DNA of 63,633 nucleotides, the filler included, from Octopus bimaculoides (lineage: Eukaryota): assembly GCF_001194135.2 (NCBI RefSeq). It is 8 parts of 7 records of this genome, joined end to end, with 100 filler letters (N's around TTAATTAATTAA, not from the genome) between each part and the next. Parts side by side here need not be neighbours in the genome. Positions count along the whole stretch, not along the records: positions 1 to 17,043 come from NC_068984.1; 7 more parts are not named here. One strand, 5' to 3'. Shown here piece by piece: positions 4,188-25,665 of this stretch; the first letter of the stretch is position 1, and every line of letters starts with the position of its first letter. A model generated the notes under the pieces. The model worked only from the letters and a program-made list of their open reading frames with translations, searched no databases and was not told the DNA's origin. A program made the position numbers and the translations under genes.

Positions 4188-5865
4188 TGGATGTGTGTGC
4201 GCGGAGATGCATAGATGTATGTGTGTGCGTGCGCGTGTGTGTGTGTTTGCGTGTGTGTGTGTGTGTGCGTGTGTGTGTGCGCGCGCGCGTGAGAGAGAGA
4301 GAGAGAGAGTGTATGAGATTGCTATGATATAATTTAGATTACTCGGTTCAGACTTCTTTTTATCGAGAAGTATCTACATCACATCGTACGTTAGACATGA
4401 CAGCCATTCATTCAAATCCATTAGATTGTGAAAATTCAGGTTTCTGAAAGATATGAAGTCAGAATATCTTCAGATAACAGCAATTAGTTAATGTTCTTTA
4501 AATCCTTTTAAGAGATATCGAAGGCTGGTGTAATATCTGAAAATATTCTATACGAAATTTTCAGTTTAGTGATCCAATGAAAAATGGAATTCTTTGTCGC
4601 CGCTGATACATTCTCTTGCTGGGTGTTCAGTTCCTTCTTCCTATGTATTATAGACGAATTGAAACAAGATATTTTCGTTATATCCTTGAAAGAAATTTAT
4701 CAAATATCTGTAGTAACTGCTTTGGAGAATGTTTACAACGAGAGTGAAATAATTCTTTCGGTACTCTCTAATGGGGTTATAGTTCTCGGTAAATCCTAAC
4801 CGTGTTAAGACAAGATCTGCAAAGCGAGCGTGCAGAAGGATTTCGAAAAATACACAGTAGCTGCTTGGATGAGGATTTATGAGGAAAAGCTTTCGAAATT
4901 AATTTGAGACCTTTGCAGTCATGTTGTAGTTGTAAAATTAGCTGATCTCGATGAATGTTAAAGAGTTTACTGTAAGTGTAATTCGGTCAGATGTGTGATC
5001 AAACAGCGGGTTTACGTAGAAAATATAGAGTGGAGAAATTCCTCTTACTAAGTTCTAGTTTCTATTTCAAAAGAGCTAGATAGCGGTGGGTTATCATCAT
5101 CTTTCGAGTGCCGGACAAATCCTAAACTACAAGTGCTGATATAAAATTCGTTCGAGTTTAAATTTTAATTTTATATATTAGGGTTGATAAATAGAACACC
5201 AGTCAAAAGCAAGGCAGTTCGCATGTACTTTCCTCTTTGTCTATCTCTAACTTTCATTAAATCAATTTCAACCACGTGTGAAAACTTCGATTATTTTCTC
5301 AAAAGGAAACAGAAGCGAGCAGCTAACAATCTTCTGTTAGTCTATATTGCTACACGAACCTACCAAGCGAAGCAGAATAATTCGGTGCGGTGTGTAGCCG
5401 TGAAATGTTACAATGAATTATATTTGGGGGGATATTTTTTAAACAGTTTACATTGAAGACCTATGTGTACGCGTACATGTGTGACTATGTGTATGCATAA
5501 CGATGGCGGTAGGCTTAATACATCTCTCGGGGTAGATTTTTCTCTGCGTATGTGTGAGTGTGTGTGTGTGTGTGTGTGTGTTTGCGTGTGCGTTTGTGCG
5601 TGCGTGCTAGATACTGGATGCTAAAACCAGTAACTGTAACTATCTATTTTATATAAATTGTGAATTTATATATATTCTAAAATAGAACATAGCATTAAAT
5701 AAAAGAAGTAATCTAAAGAATGCAAAATGCGCACGCGCGCACACACACATACACACTCAGACACACACGCACTCACACTCACATATACTCATACACACAT
5801 CCAGAGCTGGGTATATACAAGAATATAAATGTACGCTCGTATGTTCTAATACATATATAAACATT

Positions 5866-5903
5866 AGGCGTAGGCGTGGGTGTGTGGTAAGAATCTTGCT
5901 TCC
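5866..5903 (+). mobile_element. 5' part of tRNA-derived SINE (family A head), interrupted by the Tx1 elements
   Basis: ggcgtaggcgtgggtgtgtggtaagaatcttgcttcc matches the head of uninterrupted copies at 25501-25665 (-) and 44530-44690 (+). Confidence 0.85.
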
Positions 5904-6467
5904 AGTGAACAGAGGTGGATGTGGACTAGCTGTGCTCCGTCCAATTAATGAAAACAAAGAACATTTGAAGAACTCGCCAAGGTAAGTCGGTTTTGTTTCT
6001 CAGCTGAGCAATAATTTGTTGTGTATTATTTTCAGCAGGTTTTTGTTCAGCATTGCGACATTTTCGCATGCCTTTGGCGGGTTTTTTGTGTTTGTTCGTT
6101 TACGAACAAAATTCTATGTTCATTCGGATCTTTTTTAAAACGGGGGCCACATTTTTCATTAACGAAACACTTTGAAACTTGGAACACTGGTAGAATGTGT
6201 CANNNNNNNNNNCAACATGGATTCTTGCCTGATGGCAGCATCAGATATGATGACGAGGAACTATTGATTGTAAATTGATTATTGATTGTAAATTATTTGT
6301 AACCATAGTGAACAAAGGTTTTCGAGGGGTTGCCGATCAGTGGGCGTCGGTGCCCCTCTCATTTCTCATTTTTCATATATGTCATTCTCATTTTGTCATT
6401 AATGTTTCTGTCCAGCCCTAGCTTCTGCTAATCTATGTAATGCCTAAATGGCAAATTAAATTAAATA
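5904..6467 (+). mobile_element. Second Tx1-like element (5' UTR, 10-N gap, ORF2 C-terminus and 3' UTR); interior probably collapsed in the assembly
   Basis: The first ~200 bp are nearly identical to the 5' end of 6483-8757. After the gap at 6203-6212 it reads QHGFLPDGSIRYDDEELLIVN*, followed by a diverged copy of the same 3' UTR. Flanked by the same 15-bp target at 5889-5903 and 6468-6482. Confidence 0.7.
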
Positions 6468-6799
6468 AAGAAGCTCGCTTCCGGTGTACAGAGGTGGATG
6501 TGGACTAGCTGTGCTCCGTCCAATTAATGAAAGCAAAGAACATTTGAAGAACTCGCCAAGGTAAGTCGGTTTTGTTGCTCAGCTGAGCAATAATTTGTAG
6601 TGTATTTTTTTCAGCAGGTTTTTGTTCAGCATTGCGACATTTTGGCTTGCCTTTGGCGGGTTTTTTGTGTTTGTTCGTTTACGAACAAAATTGTATGTTC
6701 ATTATCTGTGGTAAGCGGGTTCGCTCCGGCCATAGAGTGAAAATTTTTGCTTGGCTTTTTAGCCAAGAAAACAAAACAAAAAAAGACTTTGTGTTCACA

Positions 6800-6978
6800 T
6801 TTGTGAACGAATTGTGAAGTGAAAATATTTGTTGGCATTTTTTGCTGAAAAACTTTGTGAACGAATTGTACAGTGAAAATATTTGTTAGCAATTTTTGCT
6901 GAAAAATTTGGTGAACGAATTGAGCAGTGAAAATATTTGTTAGCATTTTTTTTGCTGAAAAATTTTGTGAACGAATTT
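6800..6978 (+). repeat. About 3.5 copies of a ~51-bp tandem monomer in the Tx1 5' UTR
   Basis: Unit tttgtgaacgaattg.(a/c)agtgaaaatatttgtt(a/g)gca(t/a)tttttgctgaaaaa repeated directly. Confidence 0.9.
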
Positions 6979-7261
6979 GTTTGCTGCTTGTGGTTCGAGT
7001 GTTCGATTCATCACAAGAGTAGAAATATTTGGTTTGGCAATTTTTGGCCGAAAACGCAGCGGAGTACCTTGAATCGGAGTACCTTTTGAAAGAAGCTCGG
7101 ATTACCTATTGGTTGGAATTTTTTTTCAGTGTTTGAACTGTTGTTTTTCTCCCTTTTCTGTCTATCTTTTTATTTGGATCTGTTGTTTTTTTTTCTTTTC
7201 TTTCTTCGTTTTCGTTTTTTTTTTTAACTCTATTTATTCATTTGTGATCTTTTCGAACTTT

Positions 7262-8505
7262 ATGGGAAAAAAAGTGAACAGTGAAGCCACTCTCTTGGAA
7301 TGGGATGTTATACCGCCCAAGCAGTGGGTGAGAGAGACGGAAAAGAGGACAGTGGTCTTGCGGACCTATTCGAGGTCACGCAATGCCATTGCCCTCTTCA
7401 ACAAAGAAACGATAGAGAAGGAGCTGGCGGCGTGTCTGCCAGCGAAGAGCTTTTTTGTCTCAAGGGGAGTCAAATTTGCAACGGTGGGGTCGCTGTTTGA
7501 CTCCCCCGAAGAGGCTGGCACTGCAGCCAGCCAACCACTACAGGGGGAGGAGATTTCTTTCCCCCCCACTTATTGTGGAAAAAAAATTGTGAGAGCCTGG
7601 GTATGCGGACTTCCCCCAGGTACCGAAGCTGGATGGATCACAGAGGCCATCCGGCGGGGTTTGGGAGACAGTGGACCAAGGCTACTAAATGTAGACGTGG
7701 CTCCCGCAGTTGACTGGGAAGGGTCAAAGGCAACTTTGACCCTATGGACCCCGGTAGCTGTGGGAGATATTGTATTTCCGAACTTCCTAAAGATGACTGG
7801 CTGCAGGTATCCGGTGATACTTGAGGGTCGGCAACCTAGATGTCACCGGTGTCTGGAGCCTGGCCATTTGAAGAAGGATTACCGCCGGGACACTAAAGTG
7901 TCCCAGGAACGACCACCCGTTGGAGAAAGTAGTCCTGCTCGGCAGGAAGGAAAAAATGAGGAGGCGGTAGCCCCAACAGATAGAGGTAGAAAGAGGAAGG
8001 TGGGCATTAATGACAGCCCGCCGAAACCTCAAAGACATGTAGAGGTGGAAGAGGGATTGAGTCCCACGGGTAAACCAGAGGACTCCTCCTCTCCCACCGG
8101 AAAAAAGAAAAAGAATAGAAAGAAAAAAGTGCAAACGAATGTTGAACCACAGCCGTTGGGAATTGTGCCGCGACTGTGGAAATGTCTTTCCCTTCTCCGG
8201 AGGAAGAAGAAACGTTAGTTTTCTTCTTTAGGGAGGGGGAAGTAGAAAAATAATTAGAAAAGAGTCTTGGGGGAGAGGCCATGGCCTGCATACAGGATCC
8301 CGAGTGGCCTCCGCAGATAGCTGTAGAGGTCACAACGTGGGACGTACCGAATAAATTTTTTGACCTCAAAGAAATATTCTTCACGGCGCCGGGAAATGCC
8401 GACACGCCACTCGAAGAGTGCCTAGAGAGGGCGTGGGCGTTAGTGAAAAGAGGTTGTAGATATGGGGAGGATAAAAGCCCCAGTGAATTATATGAACATT
8501 TATAA
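7262..8505 (+). pseudogene. ORF1 (Gag-like nucleic-acid-binding protein) of Tx1-like element, with a frameshift near 8.15-8.2 kb and a stop
   Basis: ATG at 7262 (MGKKVNSEATLL...). V.V.GLP motif (AWVCGLPPG). CCHC-type knuckle CHRCLEPGHLKKDY at 7841-7882, last Cys TGC>TAC. Basic tract KKKKNRKKK. Continues in another frame as ...MACIQDPEWPPQ...YEHL* (8281-8505). Confidence 0.72.
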
Positions 8506-8757
8506 GTGGCTTGTTGCCTCATATAATGAGGAAGAACATTTGTGTTAATAATTTGTTTTACAAATTTGACCGACATGTATTGAACAAAGTTTTAGAGAAG
8601 TTATCAGTCGGCGGACGCTGGTGCCTCTCCCATTTTCATTCTTTCTTGTGTATTCATCTCCATTCATTAATGTCCGCGTCCAGCCCGAAGCTTCTTCGTT
8701 TGTCTGTCTTTGTTTGTCCCCTCTATGTAACGCCGTATGGCGAATTTTTATGAAATA

Positions 8758-8880
8758 AAGAAGCTTGCTTCCCAACTACAAAGTTCCGGAGTCAGTCCCA
8801 CTGCGTGGTGGCTTGGGCAGGTGTCTTCTACTATGCCTTGTGAGTGGATTTGGTAGGCTGAAACTAAAAGAAGCCCATCG
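8758..8880 (+). mobile_element. 3' continuation of the interrupted family A SINE
   Basis: aagaagcttgcttcccaactacaaagttccggagtcagtcccactgcgtgg...ttgggcaggtgtcttctactat...gtgagtggatttggtagg...gaagcccatcgt, followed by (TACA)n(CA)n(TA)n as in other copies. Confidence 0.85.
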
Positions 8881-8889
8881 TATATACAT

Positions 8890-8985
<96 letters not shown>

Positions 8986-9440: not shown

Positions 9441-9652
9441 TGTTTAATTATGCTTGCCTCATTTATTTGAGCACTTCTTTTTTTGCAGCCCTGTTAACTC
9501 TTTGTCTCATTTGAAAGAGGAACTCGATTGAGGAAAGAAAACTCGGAATGACCCATCCTTGATTTCTTTGTATCGCCTATCTGGATATTTTGTTGTCCGT
9601 TTTTGTATCACCTAACAGTCTGGATGTTTTGCGTTCTTGTGCTATCCCCCAC

Positions 9653-11139: not shown

Positions 11140-12128
11140 TATGAATAGTAATTTGGTTGCAAAATTATCGTACTAGCAGGAGATTTTAGTCAAGTCCTTC
11201 CATTTGTTTCCAGAGCTCCTCGTGCAGCTGTACACGATGCCTGACTCAAACGTTCCTTTATGTGGGATAATTTTCATCAATTGCAACTTACGCAAAACAT
11301 GAGAACAAATGCAAATGAAGAAAATTTTTCGAGGTTGCTACTACAACTACGAAGTGGATTTCTTCAAAGCTCCCTTGATAATCCAGCAGAAGATATTATT
11401 GACAATTCTGAGGCAGCAGATGTAACAGTTTTTGTTATCTTATGTATTTGACAATTGCACAGTAGAAGAGATGAAAAATAGAGTGATCTTATCCCTTAAA
11501 ATTTCGGACTGGTTAATGAAGAAATGAAGAAATTCTAAGTAGCTTGCCCCACCGAATCTAAGATATATCTAAGCACCAACTCAGTAACTTCTGATAATGA
11601 AGAAGAAGCTCAATTATCATATGAAGTCTATAAACTCTCTCACACCTTCCGGAATGCTTTCCCATCGCCTTAACTTAAAAGTTGGAGTAATTATTATGCT
11701 TCTTAGAAACCTATCTATAACACAATGTCTATGGATTGGAACTCGCTTGGATGTACTTCAACTCCACGAGCATAGCATCGAAGCGTTATTTATAAGGGGA
11801 TCTTATTCTCACACGATTGTACTCATTCCAAGTATCAAAATTAAACCAAGCGCTGCAAACATTCCTTTCGTTCTTCAACGAACACAGTTCCTGGTTCGTC
11901 TGTCCTATTCTATGACAATCAATAAAGCACAGAGGTAAACATTCAATAGAGTTGACATACACTTGCCACAGCCATTCTTCATTCATGGCCAGCTTTACGT
12001 AGCTATTTTCAAGTGCCAGGGCGATGAACAGTGTCAGCGTTAAAGCGATAACTCAAAACGAATCCACTCATGGTCGCAGAAGGGGAATCACCTACACTAG
12101 AAACATTGTATATAGGGAAGCGCTGTAA
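11140..12128 (+). mobile_element. Helitron RepHel PIF1-like helicase C-terminal remnant (frameshifts and stops)
   Basis: GDF.QVLP, LTQNMR, LTPSGM..H.L.LKVG..IMLLRNL, QF.VRLSYSMTINKAQ, HGQLYVA and TRNIVYREAL* appear in order. Confidence 0.9.
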
Positions 12129-14979: not shown

Positions 14980-16190
14980 AGTGATCTTGACATGTTCGTG
15001 TGTGCTTTTCTAGGTGTGTGGATGATTGTGTAGGCGCTGTTAAGTGGTCAGTGCTAGTGTATGCGGGGTGGTATGATGTGGAAAGGTGTAGTATGGTGGT
15101 GTGTACTATGGTGATGTATAGTGTGGTGGTACGGTTTGGTTGAGTGTGGTATGGGTGGTGGTGTTGGGGTGGGGGGCGAGAGTTGGGAAAGGAAGGGTGG
15201 GGGTCTAAGGGATAGAGTGGGAGTGGGATGGGATGTATAGGGATGGTGGTGTTGGAATGTGTAGGAGTGGGGTAACGCTGGAGGGGTGACAATGAAAGGA
15301 GAGGGTGGAAGGAAGAAGATGGGTAATACTGAATAGAGGAAGTAGGTACCAGAGCAAGAGAGGAGAGGTGGGTAGGAGGAAGTAGGTGTGAGAGGAAGAG
15401 ATGACAGAGGAGGAGGTTTAGAGGATGAGGGGAGGAGATTTTAACCCATGTGGTGAAAAGGAGCAAAGAGAGAAGATTAATACCTCCTCACGACGAAGAC
15501 GGCAGTCCGGATGGCCCCTGTGCAATGACAATCCGAACACTGACAGGTGTTGTAAAGAATGACCGGTAGAGCGAAAATGGCGCGAGACCAGGTTGTCGTT
15601 GCCGAGTCTGATGTCTCGGAGGTGTTCCGCGAACCAGTCAGCCAAGCGGCGTCCCGTTTGACCGATGTATTGAGAAGGACAGGGAGCAGGAGATGCATTA
15701 AGTGACGTTGCTAGAAGTGCAGGTAAAGGAGACTGTGATGTAAGTCGATGATGGGTGCCTGTGAGGAGGGTATTGTTGGTGGGGAACGAGCCGGGTTGGG
15801 AAATTGGGGTTAGAGAAGAAGCTGTTGACCAAGAGGTCTCGTAGGCTGTGGGCTTGTTTGAAGGAGGAAAGGGGTAGATTACGGAAGTTCTGAGAAGTGA
15901 AGTGGCTGGATTTGATTCGCCGGAAGGCTCGGAGAATGGNNNNNNNNNNAGGTAAAGGAGACTGTGATGTAAGTCGATGATGGGTGCCTGTGAGGAGGGT
16001 ATTGTTGGTGGGGAACGAGCCGGGTTGGGAAATTGGGGTTAGAGAAGAAGCTGTTGACCAAGAGGTCTCGTAGGCTGTGGGCTTGTTTGAAGGAGGAAAG
16101 GGGTAGATTACGGAAGTTCTGAGAAGTGAAGTGGCTGGATTTGATTCGCCGGAAGGCTCGGAGAATGGTGCATTGGAAAAGTAGGGGGAT
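14980..16190 (-). mobile_element. Penelope-like element 3' part (GIY-YIG endonuclease and pyrimidine-rich 3' UTR)
   Basis: PL.SF...SLRD.LV, TCTSSNV, C..C...YIGQTGRRLADWFAEHLRDIR, VSRHF...GHS, REEVLIFSL...P.GL. Bases 15721-15939 are duplicated across a 10-N gap. Confidence 0.85.
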
Positions 16191-16225
16191 GGTAGGTGAG
16201 GGGAAACGGGAGACGAGTGTATATT

Positions 16226-25295: not shown

Positions 25296-25665
25296 GCTGG
25301 AGTAGCGCCTTTAGTCGAGCAACTCGACCTCAGGACTTATTCTTTGTAAGCCTAGTACTTACTCTATCGGTCTCTTTTGCCGAACCGCTAAGTTACGGGG
25401 ACGTAAATACACCAGCATCGGTTGTGAAGCGAGGTTTGAGAGACAAACAGAGACACACAAACATACAAACACACACACACACGCATATATATACATATAT
25501 ACGACGGGCTTCTTTGAGTTACCGTCTACCAAATCCACTCACAAGGCTTTGGTCGGCCCGAGGCTATAGTAGAAGACACTTGCCCAAGGTGCCACGCAGT
25601 GGGACTGAAACCGGAACCATGTGGTTGGTAAGCAAGCTACTTACCACATAGCCACTCCTGCGCCT
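25296..25665 (-). mobile_element. Near-complete composite tRNA-SINE (head A, internal microsatellite, tail C)
   Basis: The reverse complement reads tRNA-like head (TGGTAAG A-box-like, GGTTCCGGTTTCAGTCCC B-box-like), then accttgggcaagt (CORE-like), then a (TA/CA) tract, then gtttgtc...cgatgctggtgtatttacgtccccgtaacttagcggttcggc...aaaggcgctactccagc. Confidence 0.8.

What the first reader, a model, noticed from the sequence alone, without database searches (positions are those of the whole stretch)
5866..8880. Sequence-specific Tx1/L1-clade retrotransposons stacked in tandem inside the tRNA head of a SINE
Seen in sequence: the SINE head is split into 5866-5903 and 8758-8880. Three copies of one 15-bp target occur: AAGAATCTTGCTTCC (5889-5903), AAGAAGCTCGCTTCC (6468-6482) and AAGAAGCTTGCTTCC (8758-8772). 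They bracket two elements that start at the same nucleotide position, share a near-identical ~200-bp 5' end, but have clearly diverged 3' UTRs. Empty target sites occur in other copies of the SINE (44530ff, 25501-25665). The site is the anticodon-like arm (CTTGC-TTCCCAA, tRNA-Gly-like) between the A and B boxes, so insertion should break the SINE's Pol III promoter. Established: several Tx1-clade families are target-specific (Tx1L in the Tx1D transposon, Keno in U2 snRNA, Dewa in tRNA arrays, Mutsu in 5S). Inference: this family targets a high-copy SINE, possibly as a surrogate for an ancestral tRNA target. I know of no such system in cephalopods.
Basis: partly seen in the sequence, partly recalled or inferred. 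Interest (0 to 1): 0.88.

Follow-up and report, generated by a model that had tools for sequence, protein, structure and literature searches.

The report
SINE-targeting ORF1-only LINE relatives, stacked
One copy of a common octopus SINE has been split at a single nucleotide by at least two head-to-tail copies of a LINE-derived element that has no reverse transcriptase gene, and relatives in another octopus sit at exactly the same SINE position, so this is a site-specific retrotransposon with a new target: interesting, but a variation on a known theme.

Summary
A SINE is split into 5865-5903 and 8773-8880. Three copies of a 15-bp target sit at 5889, 6468 and 8758 (0.04 expected by chance). Two inserts begin at the same nucleotide. 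Their first 225 bp are 95% identical. Their 3' UTRs are only about 70% identical.

Three corrections:
1. The inserts carry no endonuclease or reverse transcriptase. E2 is 5' UTR, ORF1 (two RRM-like domains plus a CCHC knuckle), then 3' UTR. An Octopus sinensis relative has the same ORF2-less layout, so the family looks like a non-autonomous "half-LINE".
2. E1 departs from E2 because a foldback MITE arm (6131-6202) abuts the N gap. E1's interior and size are therefore unknown.
3. tRNA finders do not recognise the SINE head. "tRNA-Gly-like" is unsupported.

Site specificity is supported. Two independent, old O. sinensis copies (51-54% ORF1 identity, unrelated flanks) start right after the same ...GCTTGCTTCC of the SINE head. 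That makes four of four 5' junctions.

Assignment to L1/Tx1 is indirect. More distant ORF1 relatives, some sharing the 3' tail motif, carry an L1-like ORF2. They also form tandem arrays, sit in an (ATT)n microsatellite, or have 15-bp duplications. No labelled Tx1 reference could be obtained for a tree.

This is a new variant of a known kind.

The parts
5865..5903 (+). 5' part (head) of the target SINE ('SINE-A'). It includes the A-box-like TGGGTGTGTGG at 5877-5887 and ends with target copy 1 at 5889-5903.
   Evidence: 86% identity to positions 1-36 of an intact SINE-A copy from L003. Aligned with intact and occupied copies.
5904..6130 (+). E1, 5' UTR segment. It starts at the same target nucleotide as E2.
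   Evidence: 95% identical to 6483-6708.
6131..6202 (.). Arm of a foldback MITE inserted in, or truncating, E1. It abuts the N gap at 6203-6212.
   Evidence: 85% identity to L002 9118-9169. The repeat has at least 5 copies in L006 and others in L001. The L002 copy folds as a 283-nt hairpin at -182 kcal/mol.
6213..6467 (+). 3' UTR of E1, or of another array member. It is a diverged subfamily and ends ...AAATTAAATA.
   Evidence: Homologous to 8500-8757 at about 70-76% identity (D9 and D13).
6468..6482 (+). Target copy 2 (AAGAAGCTCGCTTCC), sandwiched between the two elements.
6483..7261 (+). E2 5' UTR, including 3.3 copies of a 54-bp tandem repeat at 6800-6977.
   Evidence: (TRF score 289).
7262..8218 (+). 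E2 ORF1, 318 aa: two RRM-like domains, a degenerate CCHC knuckle (CHRCLEPGHLKKDY) and a basic tail.
   Evidence: - Pfam zf-CCHC match is weak.
- The knuckle is intact in L006 (CYRCLESGHIKKNC).
- The AlphaFold2 model has mean pLDDT 75, and over 90 across most of residues 21-160.
- Foldseek hits tandem-RRM proteins (UP1, SFPQ/NONO) at probability about 1 but TM-scores of only 0.2-0.3.
- 51% identical to the O. sinensis protein P0001.
- dN/dS about 0.12 against L001.
8131..8505 (+). Conserved coding segment downstream of the ORF1 basic tail, in another frame. It includes the 74-aa ORF at 8281-8505. Function is unknown, and it is not endonuclease or RT.
   Evidence: 46% amino-acid identity to the collinear segment of L006, with the block QDPEWPPQIAVEV identical. 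No Pfam hit. No ORF2 similarity. Its relation to the ORF1 C-termini of other families is not significant.
8506..8757 (+). E2 3' UTR. It carries the group-specific tail motif CGTTTGTCTGTCTTTGTTTGTCCCCTCTATGTAACGCC (8697-8734) and ends ...GAAATA.
   Evidence: The motif is shared with LINEs that carry an ORF2 or an ORF2 remnant (L003; the element end at L001 about 590-635) and with the tail of a second SINE (L006 43447-43478, 94%).
8758..8772 (+). Target copy 3 (AAGAAGCTTGCTTCC).
8773..8880 (+). 3' part of SINE-A. It resumes exactly where the head stopped, carries the B-box-like GGAGTCAGTCCC at 8788-8799, and is followed by the SINE's microsatellite tail at 8881-8980.
   Evidence: 74% identity to positions 25-150 of an intact SINE-A copy. 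Microsatellites.

Best explanation
**What it is.** The region is one old copy of a common octopus SINE. A site-specific, non-autonomous derivative of an L1/Tx1-like LINE has inserted into it at least twice, at one fixed nucleotide after ...GGTAAGAAGCTTGCTTCC, between the A and B boxes.

**Proposed mechanism (inferred by analogy with L1/Tx1 target-primed reverse transcription).**
1. An ORF2 protein supplied in trans by a partner not seen here nicks the bottom strand at 5'-...GCTTCTT/ACC.
2. The element RNA's 3' end (...AAUAAAGAA, typical of this LINE group) can pair with the exposed TTCTT and is reverse transcribed.
3. The top strand is cut 15 bp downstream, after GCTTCC. This gives a 15-bp target duplication.
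4. Each insertion regenerates the target on both sides. A second insertion into one copy of the duplication then produces the head-to-tail stack with a 15-mer between the elements.

**The elements.** They encode only an RNA-binding ORF1 (two RRM-like domains plus a CCHC knuckle) and a short conserved downstream segment. They have no endonuclease or RT. In this they resemble mammalian HAL1, but with a fixed address.

**Shown:**
- the anatomy;
- the 15-bp triplicate;
- the same junction in four copies from two species;
- the absence of ORF2;
- the ORF1 fold;
- the shared 3' tail;
- purifying selection on ORF1.

**Inferred:** the nick positions, trans-mobilisation by a SINE-specific partner, Tx1 clade membership, and inactivation of the SINE's Pol III promoter.
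For: - The 15-bp triplicate gives 3 matches against 0.04 expected.
- The SINE resumes exactly after the third 15-mer.
- All four 5' junctions fall at the same nucleotide and in the same orientation:
  - window E1: ...AAGAATCTTGCTTCC|AGTGAACAG
  - window E2: ...AAGAAGCTCGCTTCC|GGTGTACAG
  - L001 (O. sinensis CM016886.1)...GGTAAGTAGCTTGCTTCC|TGTGCATGCG
  - L006 (O. sinensis CM016865.1)...GGTAAGAAGTTTGCTTCC|ACTGCGCATG
- The copies are independent. Window flanks do not match L001 or L006. L001 and L006 share 72% identity over ORF1, plus about 69% over the SINE head and the first part of the 5' UTR, and have unrelated flanks.
- Uninterrupted SINE copies show the empty site. One, at L002 8906-8932 (GGAAGAAGCTTGCTTCTCAACCAC), belongs to the same TTC subfamily as the occupied copies.
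- No ORF2 is present in the window, L001 or L006. E2 and L006 are collinear from ORF1 into the 3' UTR.
- A separate 1.7-kb ORF1-only element with a duplication of about 17 bp lies in L004.
- ORF1 relatives at 25-30% identity sit upstream of an ORF2 with Exo_endo_phos, RVT_1 and zf-RVT (L003, L005, L002). The best solved-structure match is human L1 ORF2p, E 2e-71 over endonuclease plus RT.
- Those relatives behave like target-specific elements:
  - three tandem copies in L003;
  - (ATT)n on both sides in L002;
  - a 15-bp duplication in L005.
- The 3' tail motif is shared.
- ORF1 folds as tandem RRMs plus a CCHC knuckle.
- ORF1 of the window against L001 gives pS 0.74, pN 0.29 and dN/dS about 0.12.
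- Published precedent: Tx1 families target DNA transposons and LTR elements with 16-bp duplications, and tandem insertions sandwich a duplication (PMC4494074).
- L1-Tx1 is the only L1-group lineage listed among recently active O. vulgaris LINE families (PMC13282606).
Against: - Only four junctions from three loci could be examined. No genome-wide census was possible.
- A 3' junction with the SINE is preserved only in the window. In L001 and L006 the element's 3' part and the SINE's 3' half are missing, replaced by microsatellite and unrelated DNA.
- No autonomous partner at this site was found, so nothing shows which protein sets the address.
- Tx1 membership was not tested by phylogeny. No protein labelled Tx1 was retrievable, and the window elements have no RT.
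- The 95% against 70% discordance between the 5' and 3' ends of E1 and E2 is unexplained, and E1 spans a gap.
- The SINE head is not recognised as tRNA-like by the tRNA finders.
Confidence: 0.65

Rival explanations
1. The SINE head is carried along with the element rather than being its target. A copy sitting in a SINE was transcribed from the SINE start or from upstream, and head plus element retrotransposed together. The heads in L001 and L006 would then be 5' baggage, not independent hits on the target.
For: - L001 and L006 keep only the head-to-element junction. No SINE 3' half lies downstream.
- Some Tx1 families carry pieces of their snRNA target at their 5' ends (PMC4494074).
Against: - In the window the SINE resumes precisely after the third 15-mer.
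- E2 is preceded by only the 15-mer, not by a head.
- The occupied heads are about 85% identical to one another while the elements are 66-72% identical. This fits separate SINE copies hit by diverged lineages, though the heads are short.
- The 5' UTR holds several T runs that would stop Pol III.
- No double head is seen.
Confidence: 0.12
2. There is no real sequence specificity. A LINE with a loose nick preference (TTCTT/A-like) plus 3'-end microhomology lands in this SINE simply because the SINE is the genome's commonest carrier of that short motif.
For: - SINEs make up about 11.6% of the O. vulgaris genome (PMC13282606).
- The element's 3' end ...AAATAAAGAA overlaps the start of the duplication (AAGAAG), so microhomology is possible.
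- Relatives in L004 and L005 have duplications at unrelated sequences.
Against: - Four of four junctions fall at one nucleotide in one orientation.
- SINE-A covers under 1% of the 177 kb sampled here.
- The site is kept by lineages whose synonymous sites are saturated.
- All occupied copies belong to the GCTTGCTTCC subtype, whereas most intact copies read GyTTACC.
Confidence: 0.1
3. The tandem is an assembly artefact. The scaffold joined two contigs from different loci or haplotypes at the gap, and only one element sits in this SINE.
For: - The gap at 6203-6212 lies inside a foldback repeat, which commonly breaks assemblies.
- The 5' piece left of the gap is 95% identical to E2, while the 3' piece right of it is only about 70% identical to E2's 3' UTR.
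Against: - The junction of 3' UTR, 15-mer and E2 5' end (6213-6710) is gap-free, so a head-to-tail pair exists within one contig.
- Five per cent divergence is too high for two haplotypes of one copy.
- Both contigs independently show the same target 15-mer.
Confidence: 0.08
4. The family derives from another endonuclease-bearing LINE clade (for example R1, which also holds many target-specific families) rather than L1/Tx1.
For: - The window elements have no RT, so the clade is inferred only through 25-30% ORF1 identity and a shared 3' motif.
- R1-clade elements also have gag-like ORF1s with CCHC knuckles (general knowledge).
Against: - The ORF2 linked to the homologous ORF1 and tail matches human L1 ORF2p across endonuclease plus RT in one stretch (E 2e-71) and carries the zf-RVT C-terminal domain.
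- R1 is not among the LINE clades listed as recently active in O. vulgaris, whereas L1-Tx1 is.
Confidence: 0.08

Closest known systems
Tx1-clade families that target other transposons (Tx1L in the piggyBac-type Tx1D; crocodilian Tx1-Mar and SINEU-3 in Mariner-N4_AMi; others in LTR and Harbinger elements) - PMC4494074
   Same: - Insertion at a fixed position inside another interspersed repeat.
- Target duplication of 15-16 bp.
- Tandem insertions sandwiching a duplication.
- Non-autonomous passengers share the same address.
- L1-like ORF2 in the related autonomous elements here.
   Different: - The target is the head of a SINE, between its A and B boxes.
- The copies seen here have ORF1 but no ORF2.
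- Clade membership was not shown by RT phylogeny.
- The host is a cephalopod.
Tx1-clade families in small RNA genes and microsatellites (Keno/U2, Mutsu/5S, Dewa/tRNA arrays, Kibi (TC)n, Koshi (TTC)n; Kojima and Fujiwara 2004, as cited in PMC4494074)
   Same: - A multicopy, Pol III-type or repetitive target.
- An octopus relative (L002) sits in (ATT)n, like Kibi and Koshi in their microsatellites.
   Different: - The target is a retroposed SINE copy, not a functional RNA gene.
- No insertion in a genuine tRNA gene was seen or could be tested.
HAL1 ('half-L1') of mammals (PMC5753468)
   Same: A non-autonomous LINE derivative that keeps the UTRs and ORF1 only and presumably uses ORF2p in trans. 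The ORF1-only form recurs in the group (E2, L006, L004).
   Different: - HAL1 is not site-specific.
- Its ORF1 is the L1 coiled-coil/RRM/CTD type, not RRM-RRM-CCHC.
- Propagation of this family as ORF1-only elements rests on two collinear copies plus one relative.
R2, R1 and other rDNA-specific LINEs
   Same: Strict single-site insertion into a multicopy target, and tandem or nested occupancy.
   Different: R2 uses a restriction-like endonuclease and is co-transcribed with the rRNA. Here the related ORF2 has an AP-type endonuclease, and the 5' UTR is long with tandem repeats, suggesting (not tested) that it carries its own promoter.

Membership tests
Tx1 clade (L1 group) non-LTR retrotransposons | The RT domain groups with Tx1 references in a phylogeny (RTclass1/Repbase). 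| not testable with these tools
   The window elements have no RT. No sequence labelled Tx1 could be retrieved for a tree.
Tx1 clade (L1 group) non-LTR retrotransposons | ORF2 with an AP-type endonuclease, RT and a C-terminal zinc-binding domain. | tested here: not met
   Absent from E1, E2, L001 and L006. Present in elements whose ORF1 is 25-30% identical, some sharing the 3' tail motif (L003, L005, L002: Exo_endo_phos, RVT_1, zf-RVT; human L1 ORF2p E 2e-71). The window elements can therefore only be derivatives, not full members.
Tx1 clade (L1 group) non-LTR retrotransposons | ORF1 of the RRM plus CCHC-knuckle type, not the L1 Transposase_22 type. | tested here: met
   - A CCHC knuckle is reconstructed from the window, P0001 and L006.
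- The model folds as tandem RRMs.
- No Transposase_22 hit.
- The link to ZCCHC3-type RNA-binding domains is only weak (hhalign E 0.004, probability 8%).
Target-specific LINE (Kojima's criterion: one sequence in more than 20% of flanks) | Independent copies flanked by the same target at the same position. | tested here: met
   Four of four 5' junctions and one of one preserved outer 3' junction. The sample is very small and there is no genome-wide census.
Target-specific LINE (Kojima's criterion: one sequence in more than 20% of flanks) | Fixed-length target duplication, and tandem copies sandwiching a duplication. | tested here: met
   The 15-mer occurs three times. A relative in L005 also has a 15-bp duplication.
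HAL1-like ORF1-only non-autonomous LINE derivative | LINE UTRs plus ORF1, no ORF2, flanked by a target duplication, and more than one copy with this layout. | tested here: met
   E2 is duplication-flanked with 5' UTR, ORF1 and 3' UTR. L006 is collinear. L004 holds a separate 1.7-kb ORF1-only element with a duplication. Whether the layout was transmitted or arose by separate deletions is not proven.
tRNA-derived SINE (SINE2), for the target | The head is recognisable as a tRNA. | tested here: not met
   ARAGORN finds nothing in the rejoined SINE or in any locus. The Rfam tRNA model has no hit at E up to 10 on intact copies.
tRNA-derived SINE (SINE2), for the target | Internal Pol III A and B boxes at tRNA-like spacing; short; many dispersed copies. 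| tested here: inconclusive
   - By eye, intact copies carry TGGCTGTGTGG (A box TRGCNNAGTGG, 10 of 11) and GGTTCAGTCCC (B box GGTTCGANNCC, 9 of 11) about 40 nt apart.
- About 10 copies or fragments lie in 177 kb from three species.
- No promoter test was possible.

The most novel reading that the evidence does not exclude
The address may be carried by the non-autonomous element itself. Its RNA 3' end (...AAUAAAGAA pairing with the nicked TTCTT of the SINE) and/or its own ORF1 protein could steer a generic ORF2 protein from related LINEs to one nucleotide of the genome's dominant SINE. On this reading an ancient ORF1-only lineage has kept a fixed target without ever encoding an endonuclease. 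The saturated synonymous divergence between lineages that share the site would then suggest that the target, perhaps a tRNA-type sequence, is older than the present SINE family.
Probability: 0.1. Interest if true: 0.8.

Novelty: new variant of a known kind. Interest (0 to 1): 0.5.

Why it matters
- Target-specific LINEs are natural models for programmable, site-directed DNA insertion. They also show how selfish elements find 'safe harbours'.
- None of the papers found here reports a SINE head as the safe harbour. It would be a LINE relative that parasitises, and kills copies of, the very class of element that usually parasitises LINEs.
- If the ORF1-only architecture is the transmitted form, this is a site-specific 'half-LINE'. 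It would allow target choice to be separated experimentally from the endonuclease/RT protein.
- For cephalopod genomics it explains one class of nested repeat. It also flags a LINE group (L003, L002, L005, L004) that includes tandemly arrayed, apparently intact copies.

Tried and rejected
- Other SINE copies in the piece: none found.
- tRNA detection on the rejoined SINE, on intact copies and on all loci: negative. The Rfam hits in the window are all microsatellite look-alikes of miRNA models.
- ORF2 remnants in the window, L001 and L006: none downstream of ORF1.
- Pfam on ORF1 and on the 74-aa ORF: only a weak zf-CCHC match.
- A word-index protein search with ORF1 found only P0001. The exhaustive profile search found 67 relatives, of which only P0001 and a 47-residue piece of P0015 are close.
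- A clade label from database names failed. No hit to the octopus or frog ORF2 carries a Tx1 or L1 name. The Tx1 paper has no supplement held as text.
- The ORF1 profile against a fish ZCCHC3-type ORF1 gave E 0.004 at probability 8%, which is not convincing.
- The conserved post-ORF1 segment against the ORF1 C-termini of other families was not significant. I dropped the claim that it is the canonical ORF1 C-terminal domain.
- Two metagenome scans, for the 5' end and for the conserved 30-mer, found nothing.
- L008, a short contig with a related ORF2, has too little flank to show a junction.
- Orthology of the window and the O. sinensis loci is rejected because the flanks do not align.
- Hitch-hiking of the LINE on SINE retroposition is unlikely: the unit is about 2.3-2.9 kb, the 5' UTR holds Pol III terminator-like T runs, and the heads are less diverged than the elements.


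Full report

Yes. The 15-mers are at 5889-5903, 6468-6482 and 8758-8772. At up to two mismatches the window holds exactly these three matches against 0.04 expected, and none of 200 shuffles reached three.

Joining 5865-5903 to 8773-8880 gives a sequence that matches uninterrupted copies of an octopus SINE, here called SINE-A, in other loci I fetched:
- L003 19829-20003 and 19641-19802
- L004 18089-18238
- three copies in L006
- L002 8889-8951

So the window holds a SINE split by an insertion, and empty sites exist elsewhere.

Both inserts start directly after ...GCTTCC. Segments 5889-6124 and 6468-6703 are 95% identical. The 3' ends are homologous at about 70-76%.

**2. The gap**

E1 stops resembling E2 at 6131. 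From there to the gap (6131-6202) it matches one arm of a foldback MITE:
- 85% identity to L002 9118-9169;
- the L002 copy is a 283-nt hairpin of -182 kcal/mol;
- at least five more copies lie in L006.

Right of the gap the sequence is LINE 3' UTR. The two sides are therefore not continuous. At least the rest of the MITE and all of E1's interior are missing. No reading frame is involved, and the array may hold more than two elements.

The junction of 3' UTR, 15-mer and E2 5' end lies in gap-free sequence, so a head-to-tail pair is real unless that contig is chimeric.

The contrast between 95% identity at the 5' ends and about 70% at the 3' ends is unexplained. Possible causes are 5' UTR exchange, gene conversion between neighbours, or the two E1 pieces belonging to different elements.

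**3. What the inserts are**

E2 (6483-8757) consists of the following parts.
- A 780-bp 5' UTR with 3.3 copies of a 54-bp repeat.
- ORF1 at 7262-8218.
- A further conserved coding stretch in another frame, which includes the 74-aa ORF at 8281-8505.
- A 250-bp 3' UTR.

There is no trace of an endonuclease or a reverse transcriptase.

*ORF1*
- It has a decayed CCHC knuckle. The window reads CHRC...H....Y and P0001 reads FHLC...H....C. L006 keeps the intact form, CYRC...H....C.
- An AlphaFold2 model has mean pLDDT 75, with over 90 across most of residues 21-160.
- The model matches tandem-RRM proteins such as UP1/hnRNP A1 and SFPQ/NONO. Foldseek probability is about 1, but TM-scores are only 0.2-0.3.

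*Relatives*
- The only close database relative is O. sinensis LOC115225585 (P0001, 51% identity).
- An exhaustive profile search found 67 more distant ORF1 relatives, many from octopods.

**4. Related loci**

I fetched the genomic loci of six ORF1 relatives.

*Two more members of this family, both in O. sinensis*
- In L001 the element starts at 9491, right after TAGGCTGAGGCATGGCTGTGTGGTAAGTAGCTTGCTTCC.
- In L006 it starts at 15741, right after TAGGCGCAGGCGTTGCCGTGTGGTAAGAAGTTTGCTTCC.
- These are the same SINE head, the same nucleotide and the same orientation as in the window.
- The loci are not orthologous to the window or to each other. Flanks do not align, and the elements are only 66-72% identical.
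- All four available 5' junctions therefore use one position.
- The occupied copies all read GCTTGCTTCC, whereas most intact copies read G(C/T)TTACC. One intact copy of the TTC type is at L002 8906-8932.
- In L001 and L006 the element's 3' part and the SINE's 3' half are gone. This is the main weakness of the case.

*Age and selection*
- ORF1 of the window against L001 gives pS 0.74, pN 0.29 and dN/dS about 0.12.
- The lineages therefore diverged to synonymous saturation under purifying selection while keeping the same address.
- Error-prone retrotransposition inflates these rates, so this does not give a date.

*ORF2-less architecture*
- L006 and E2 are collinear from ORF1 through the conserved downstream stretch into the start of the 3' UTR, with no ORF2 between.
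- L004 (O. vulgaris) holds a separate 1.7-kb ORF1-only element with a duplication of about 17 bp.
- The family is thus best read as a HAL1-like, non-autonomous lineage (HAL1 is described in PMC5753468).
- Its endonuclease and RT must come from a partner I did not find.

**5. Which LINE group?**

The more distant ORF1 relatives (25-30% identity) lie upstream of a long ORF2 with Exo_endo_phos, RVT_1 and zf-RVT domains (L003, L005, L002). Its best solved-structure match is human L1 ORF2p, E 2e-71 in one stretch covering endonuclease plus RT. R2 proteins match only in the RT, at about 1e-24.

Several of these elements share a 3' tail motif with E1 and E2 (TGTCCyyTCTaTGT...AATAAAG):
- the L003 element;
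- weaker variants at the ends of the L002 and L005 elements;
- the element end at L001 about 590-635, which follows an ORF2 C-terminus.

Their behaviour resembles that of target-specific elements:
- three 98-100% identical copies head to tail in L003;
- (ATT)n on both sides in L002;
- a 15-bp duplication in L005.

A curated O. vulgaris annotation lists RTE, Dong-R4, CR1, L1-Tx1, Hero and R2 as its recently active LINE groups (PMC13282606). An L1-like ORF2 with a CCHC-type ORF1 fits only L1-Tx1 among these.

This is inference by elimination, not a test. I could obtain no labelled Tx1 reference for a tree.

**6. The target**

Intact SINE-A copies carry TGGCTGTGTGG (A-box-like) and GGTTCAGTCCC (B-box-like). 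The insertion falls between them and now separates them by about 2.9 kb. That should abolish Pol III transcription of this copy, although the copy is old and diverged anyway.

ARAGORN and the Rfam tRNA model do not recognise the head. The 'anticodon arm, tRNA-Gly-like' reading therefore rests only on visual inspection.

**7. Mechanism**

- *Shown:* fixed junctions and a 15-bp duplication.
- *Inferred from L1/Tx1 biology:*
  - The first nick is on the bottom strand at GCTTCTT/ACC.
  - Priming occurs on the element RNA, whose end ...AAUAAAGAA can pair with TTCTT.
  - The second nick falls 15 bp downstream.
  - Re-insertion into a regenerated 15-mer gives the stack.
- *Precedent:* Kojima described the same picture for crocodilian Tx1-Mar and SINEU-3 in a Mariner element, with a 16-bp duplication and tandem copies sandwiching a duplication (PMC4494074).

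**8. Rivals**

- A co-mobilised head, confidence 0.12.
- A loose nick preference in an abundant SINE, 0.10.
- A scaffolding artefact, 0.08.
- Another endonuclease-bearing LINE clade, 0.08.

Each is set out with its refuting result in the Rival explanations section.

**9. Verdict**

The anatomy is real and the site-specific reading is well supported for so small a sample. The label 'Tx1/L1-clade retrotransposons' should be softened to 'ORF1-only derivatives of an L1/Tx1-like octopod LINE group'.

Tx1 families that target other mobile elements, and ORF1-only LINE derivatives, are both known. The new points are the SINE head as the target and the combination of a fixed address with an ORF2-less element.

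Interest 0.5; new variant of a known kind.

Noticed in passing
L003 4445-19200 (Octopus vulgaris OX597840.1): Three head-to-tail, 98-100% identical 5.28-kb L1/Tx1-like LINEs. The first has an uninterrupted ORF1 and a 1132-aa ORF2 (endonuclease, RT, zf-RVT). Junctions read ...AAATAAAATAAAACACTGAT|AAGGACGTTAC. This looks like a recently active element with a target of its own.
   Followed up: partly
L002 9778-15345 (Octopus sinensis CM016872.1): A related LINE with (ATT)n on both sides, so it appears to target a microsatellite, like Kibi and Koshi in fish. Its ORF2 is broken into several frames.
   Followed up: partly
L004 9923-11652 (Octopus vulgaris OX597833.1): A 1.7-kb element made of a short 5' UTR, an ORF1 (P0010) and a 3' UTR with the group's tail motif. 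It is flanked by a duplication of about 17 bp (GCTGGGTTCGtCTAgCTC). This is a second ORF1-only lineage.
   Followed up: partly
L006 43330-43510 (+) and 40360-40580 (-): A second SINE family whose 3' tail (CCGTTTGTCTGTCCTTGTTTGTCCCCTCTGTGTTTAGCCCCTTGTGGGTAGTAAAGAAAT) matches the 3' UTR of this LINE group; it is 94% identical to window 8697-8728. This LINE group is probably the SINE's mobilising partner.
   Followed up: no
window 8300-8331 and L006 17483-17514: A 32-nt island (CAGGATCCCGA[G/A]TGGCCTCCGCAGATAGCTGT) differs at only one base between the two species' copies, while the surrounding sequence is about 70% identical. It encodes QDPEWPPQIAV. The reason for the extra conservation is unknown.
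   Followed up: no
window 6131-6202; L002 9080-9362; several in L006: A repeated foldback MITE with near-perfect arms of about 130 nt. In the window it sits exactly at the assembly gap, which probably explains the gap.
   Followed up: yes
window 11597-11938 (+): A 113-aa ORF with a Pif1 helicase 2B domain (Pfam PF21530, E 5e-12). It is probably a relic of a Helitron or a PIF1-like gene.
   Followed up: partly
window 15000-16200: A GC-rich block with strong G skew (GC 0.50-0.52, skew up to 0.75). It contains a 229-bp unit repeated twice (15713-16168, 94% match). No protein-family hit on the long minus-strand ORFs.
   Followed up: no
L001 1-640: The 3' end of another LINE of this group: an ORF2 C-terminus 54% identical to L003's, then a 3' UTR. 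Its tail (TGTCCTTCTATGTAACG...AATAAAGAAAT) is the closest match to E2's tail, but it is not inserted in SINE-A.
   Followed up: no
P0138 and P0244 (fish and frog proteins): Vertebrate relatives of the octopus ORF2 are annotated as single proteins in which ORF2 is followed by ZCCHC3-type RNA-binding domains and a CCHC knuckle. This may mean the gene models run across tandem copies of such elements.
   Followed up: no
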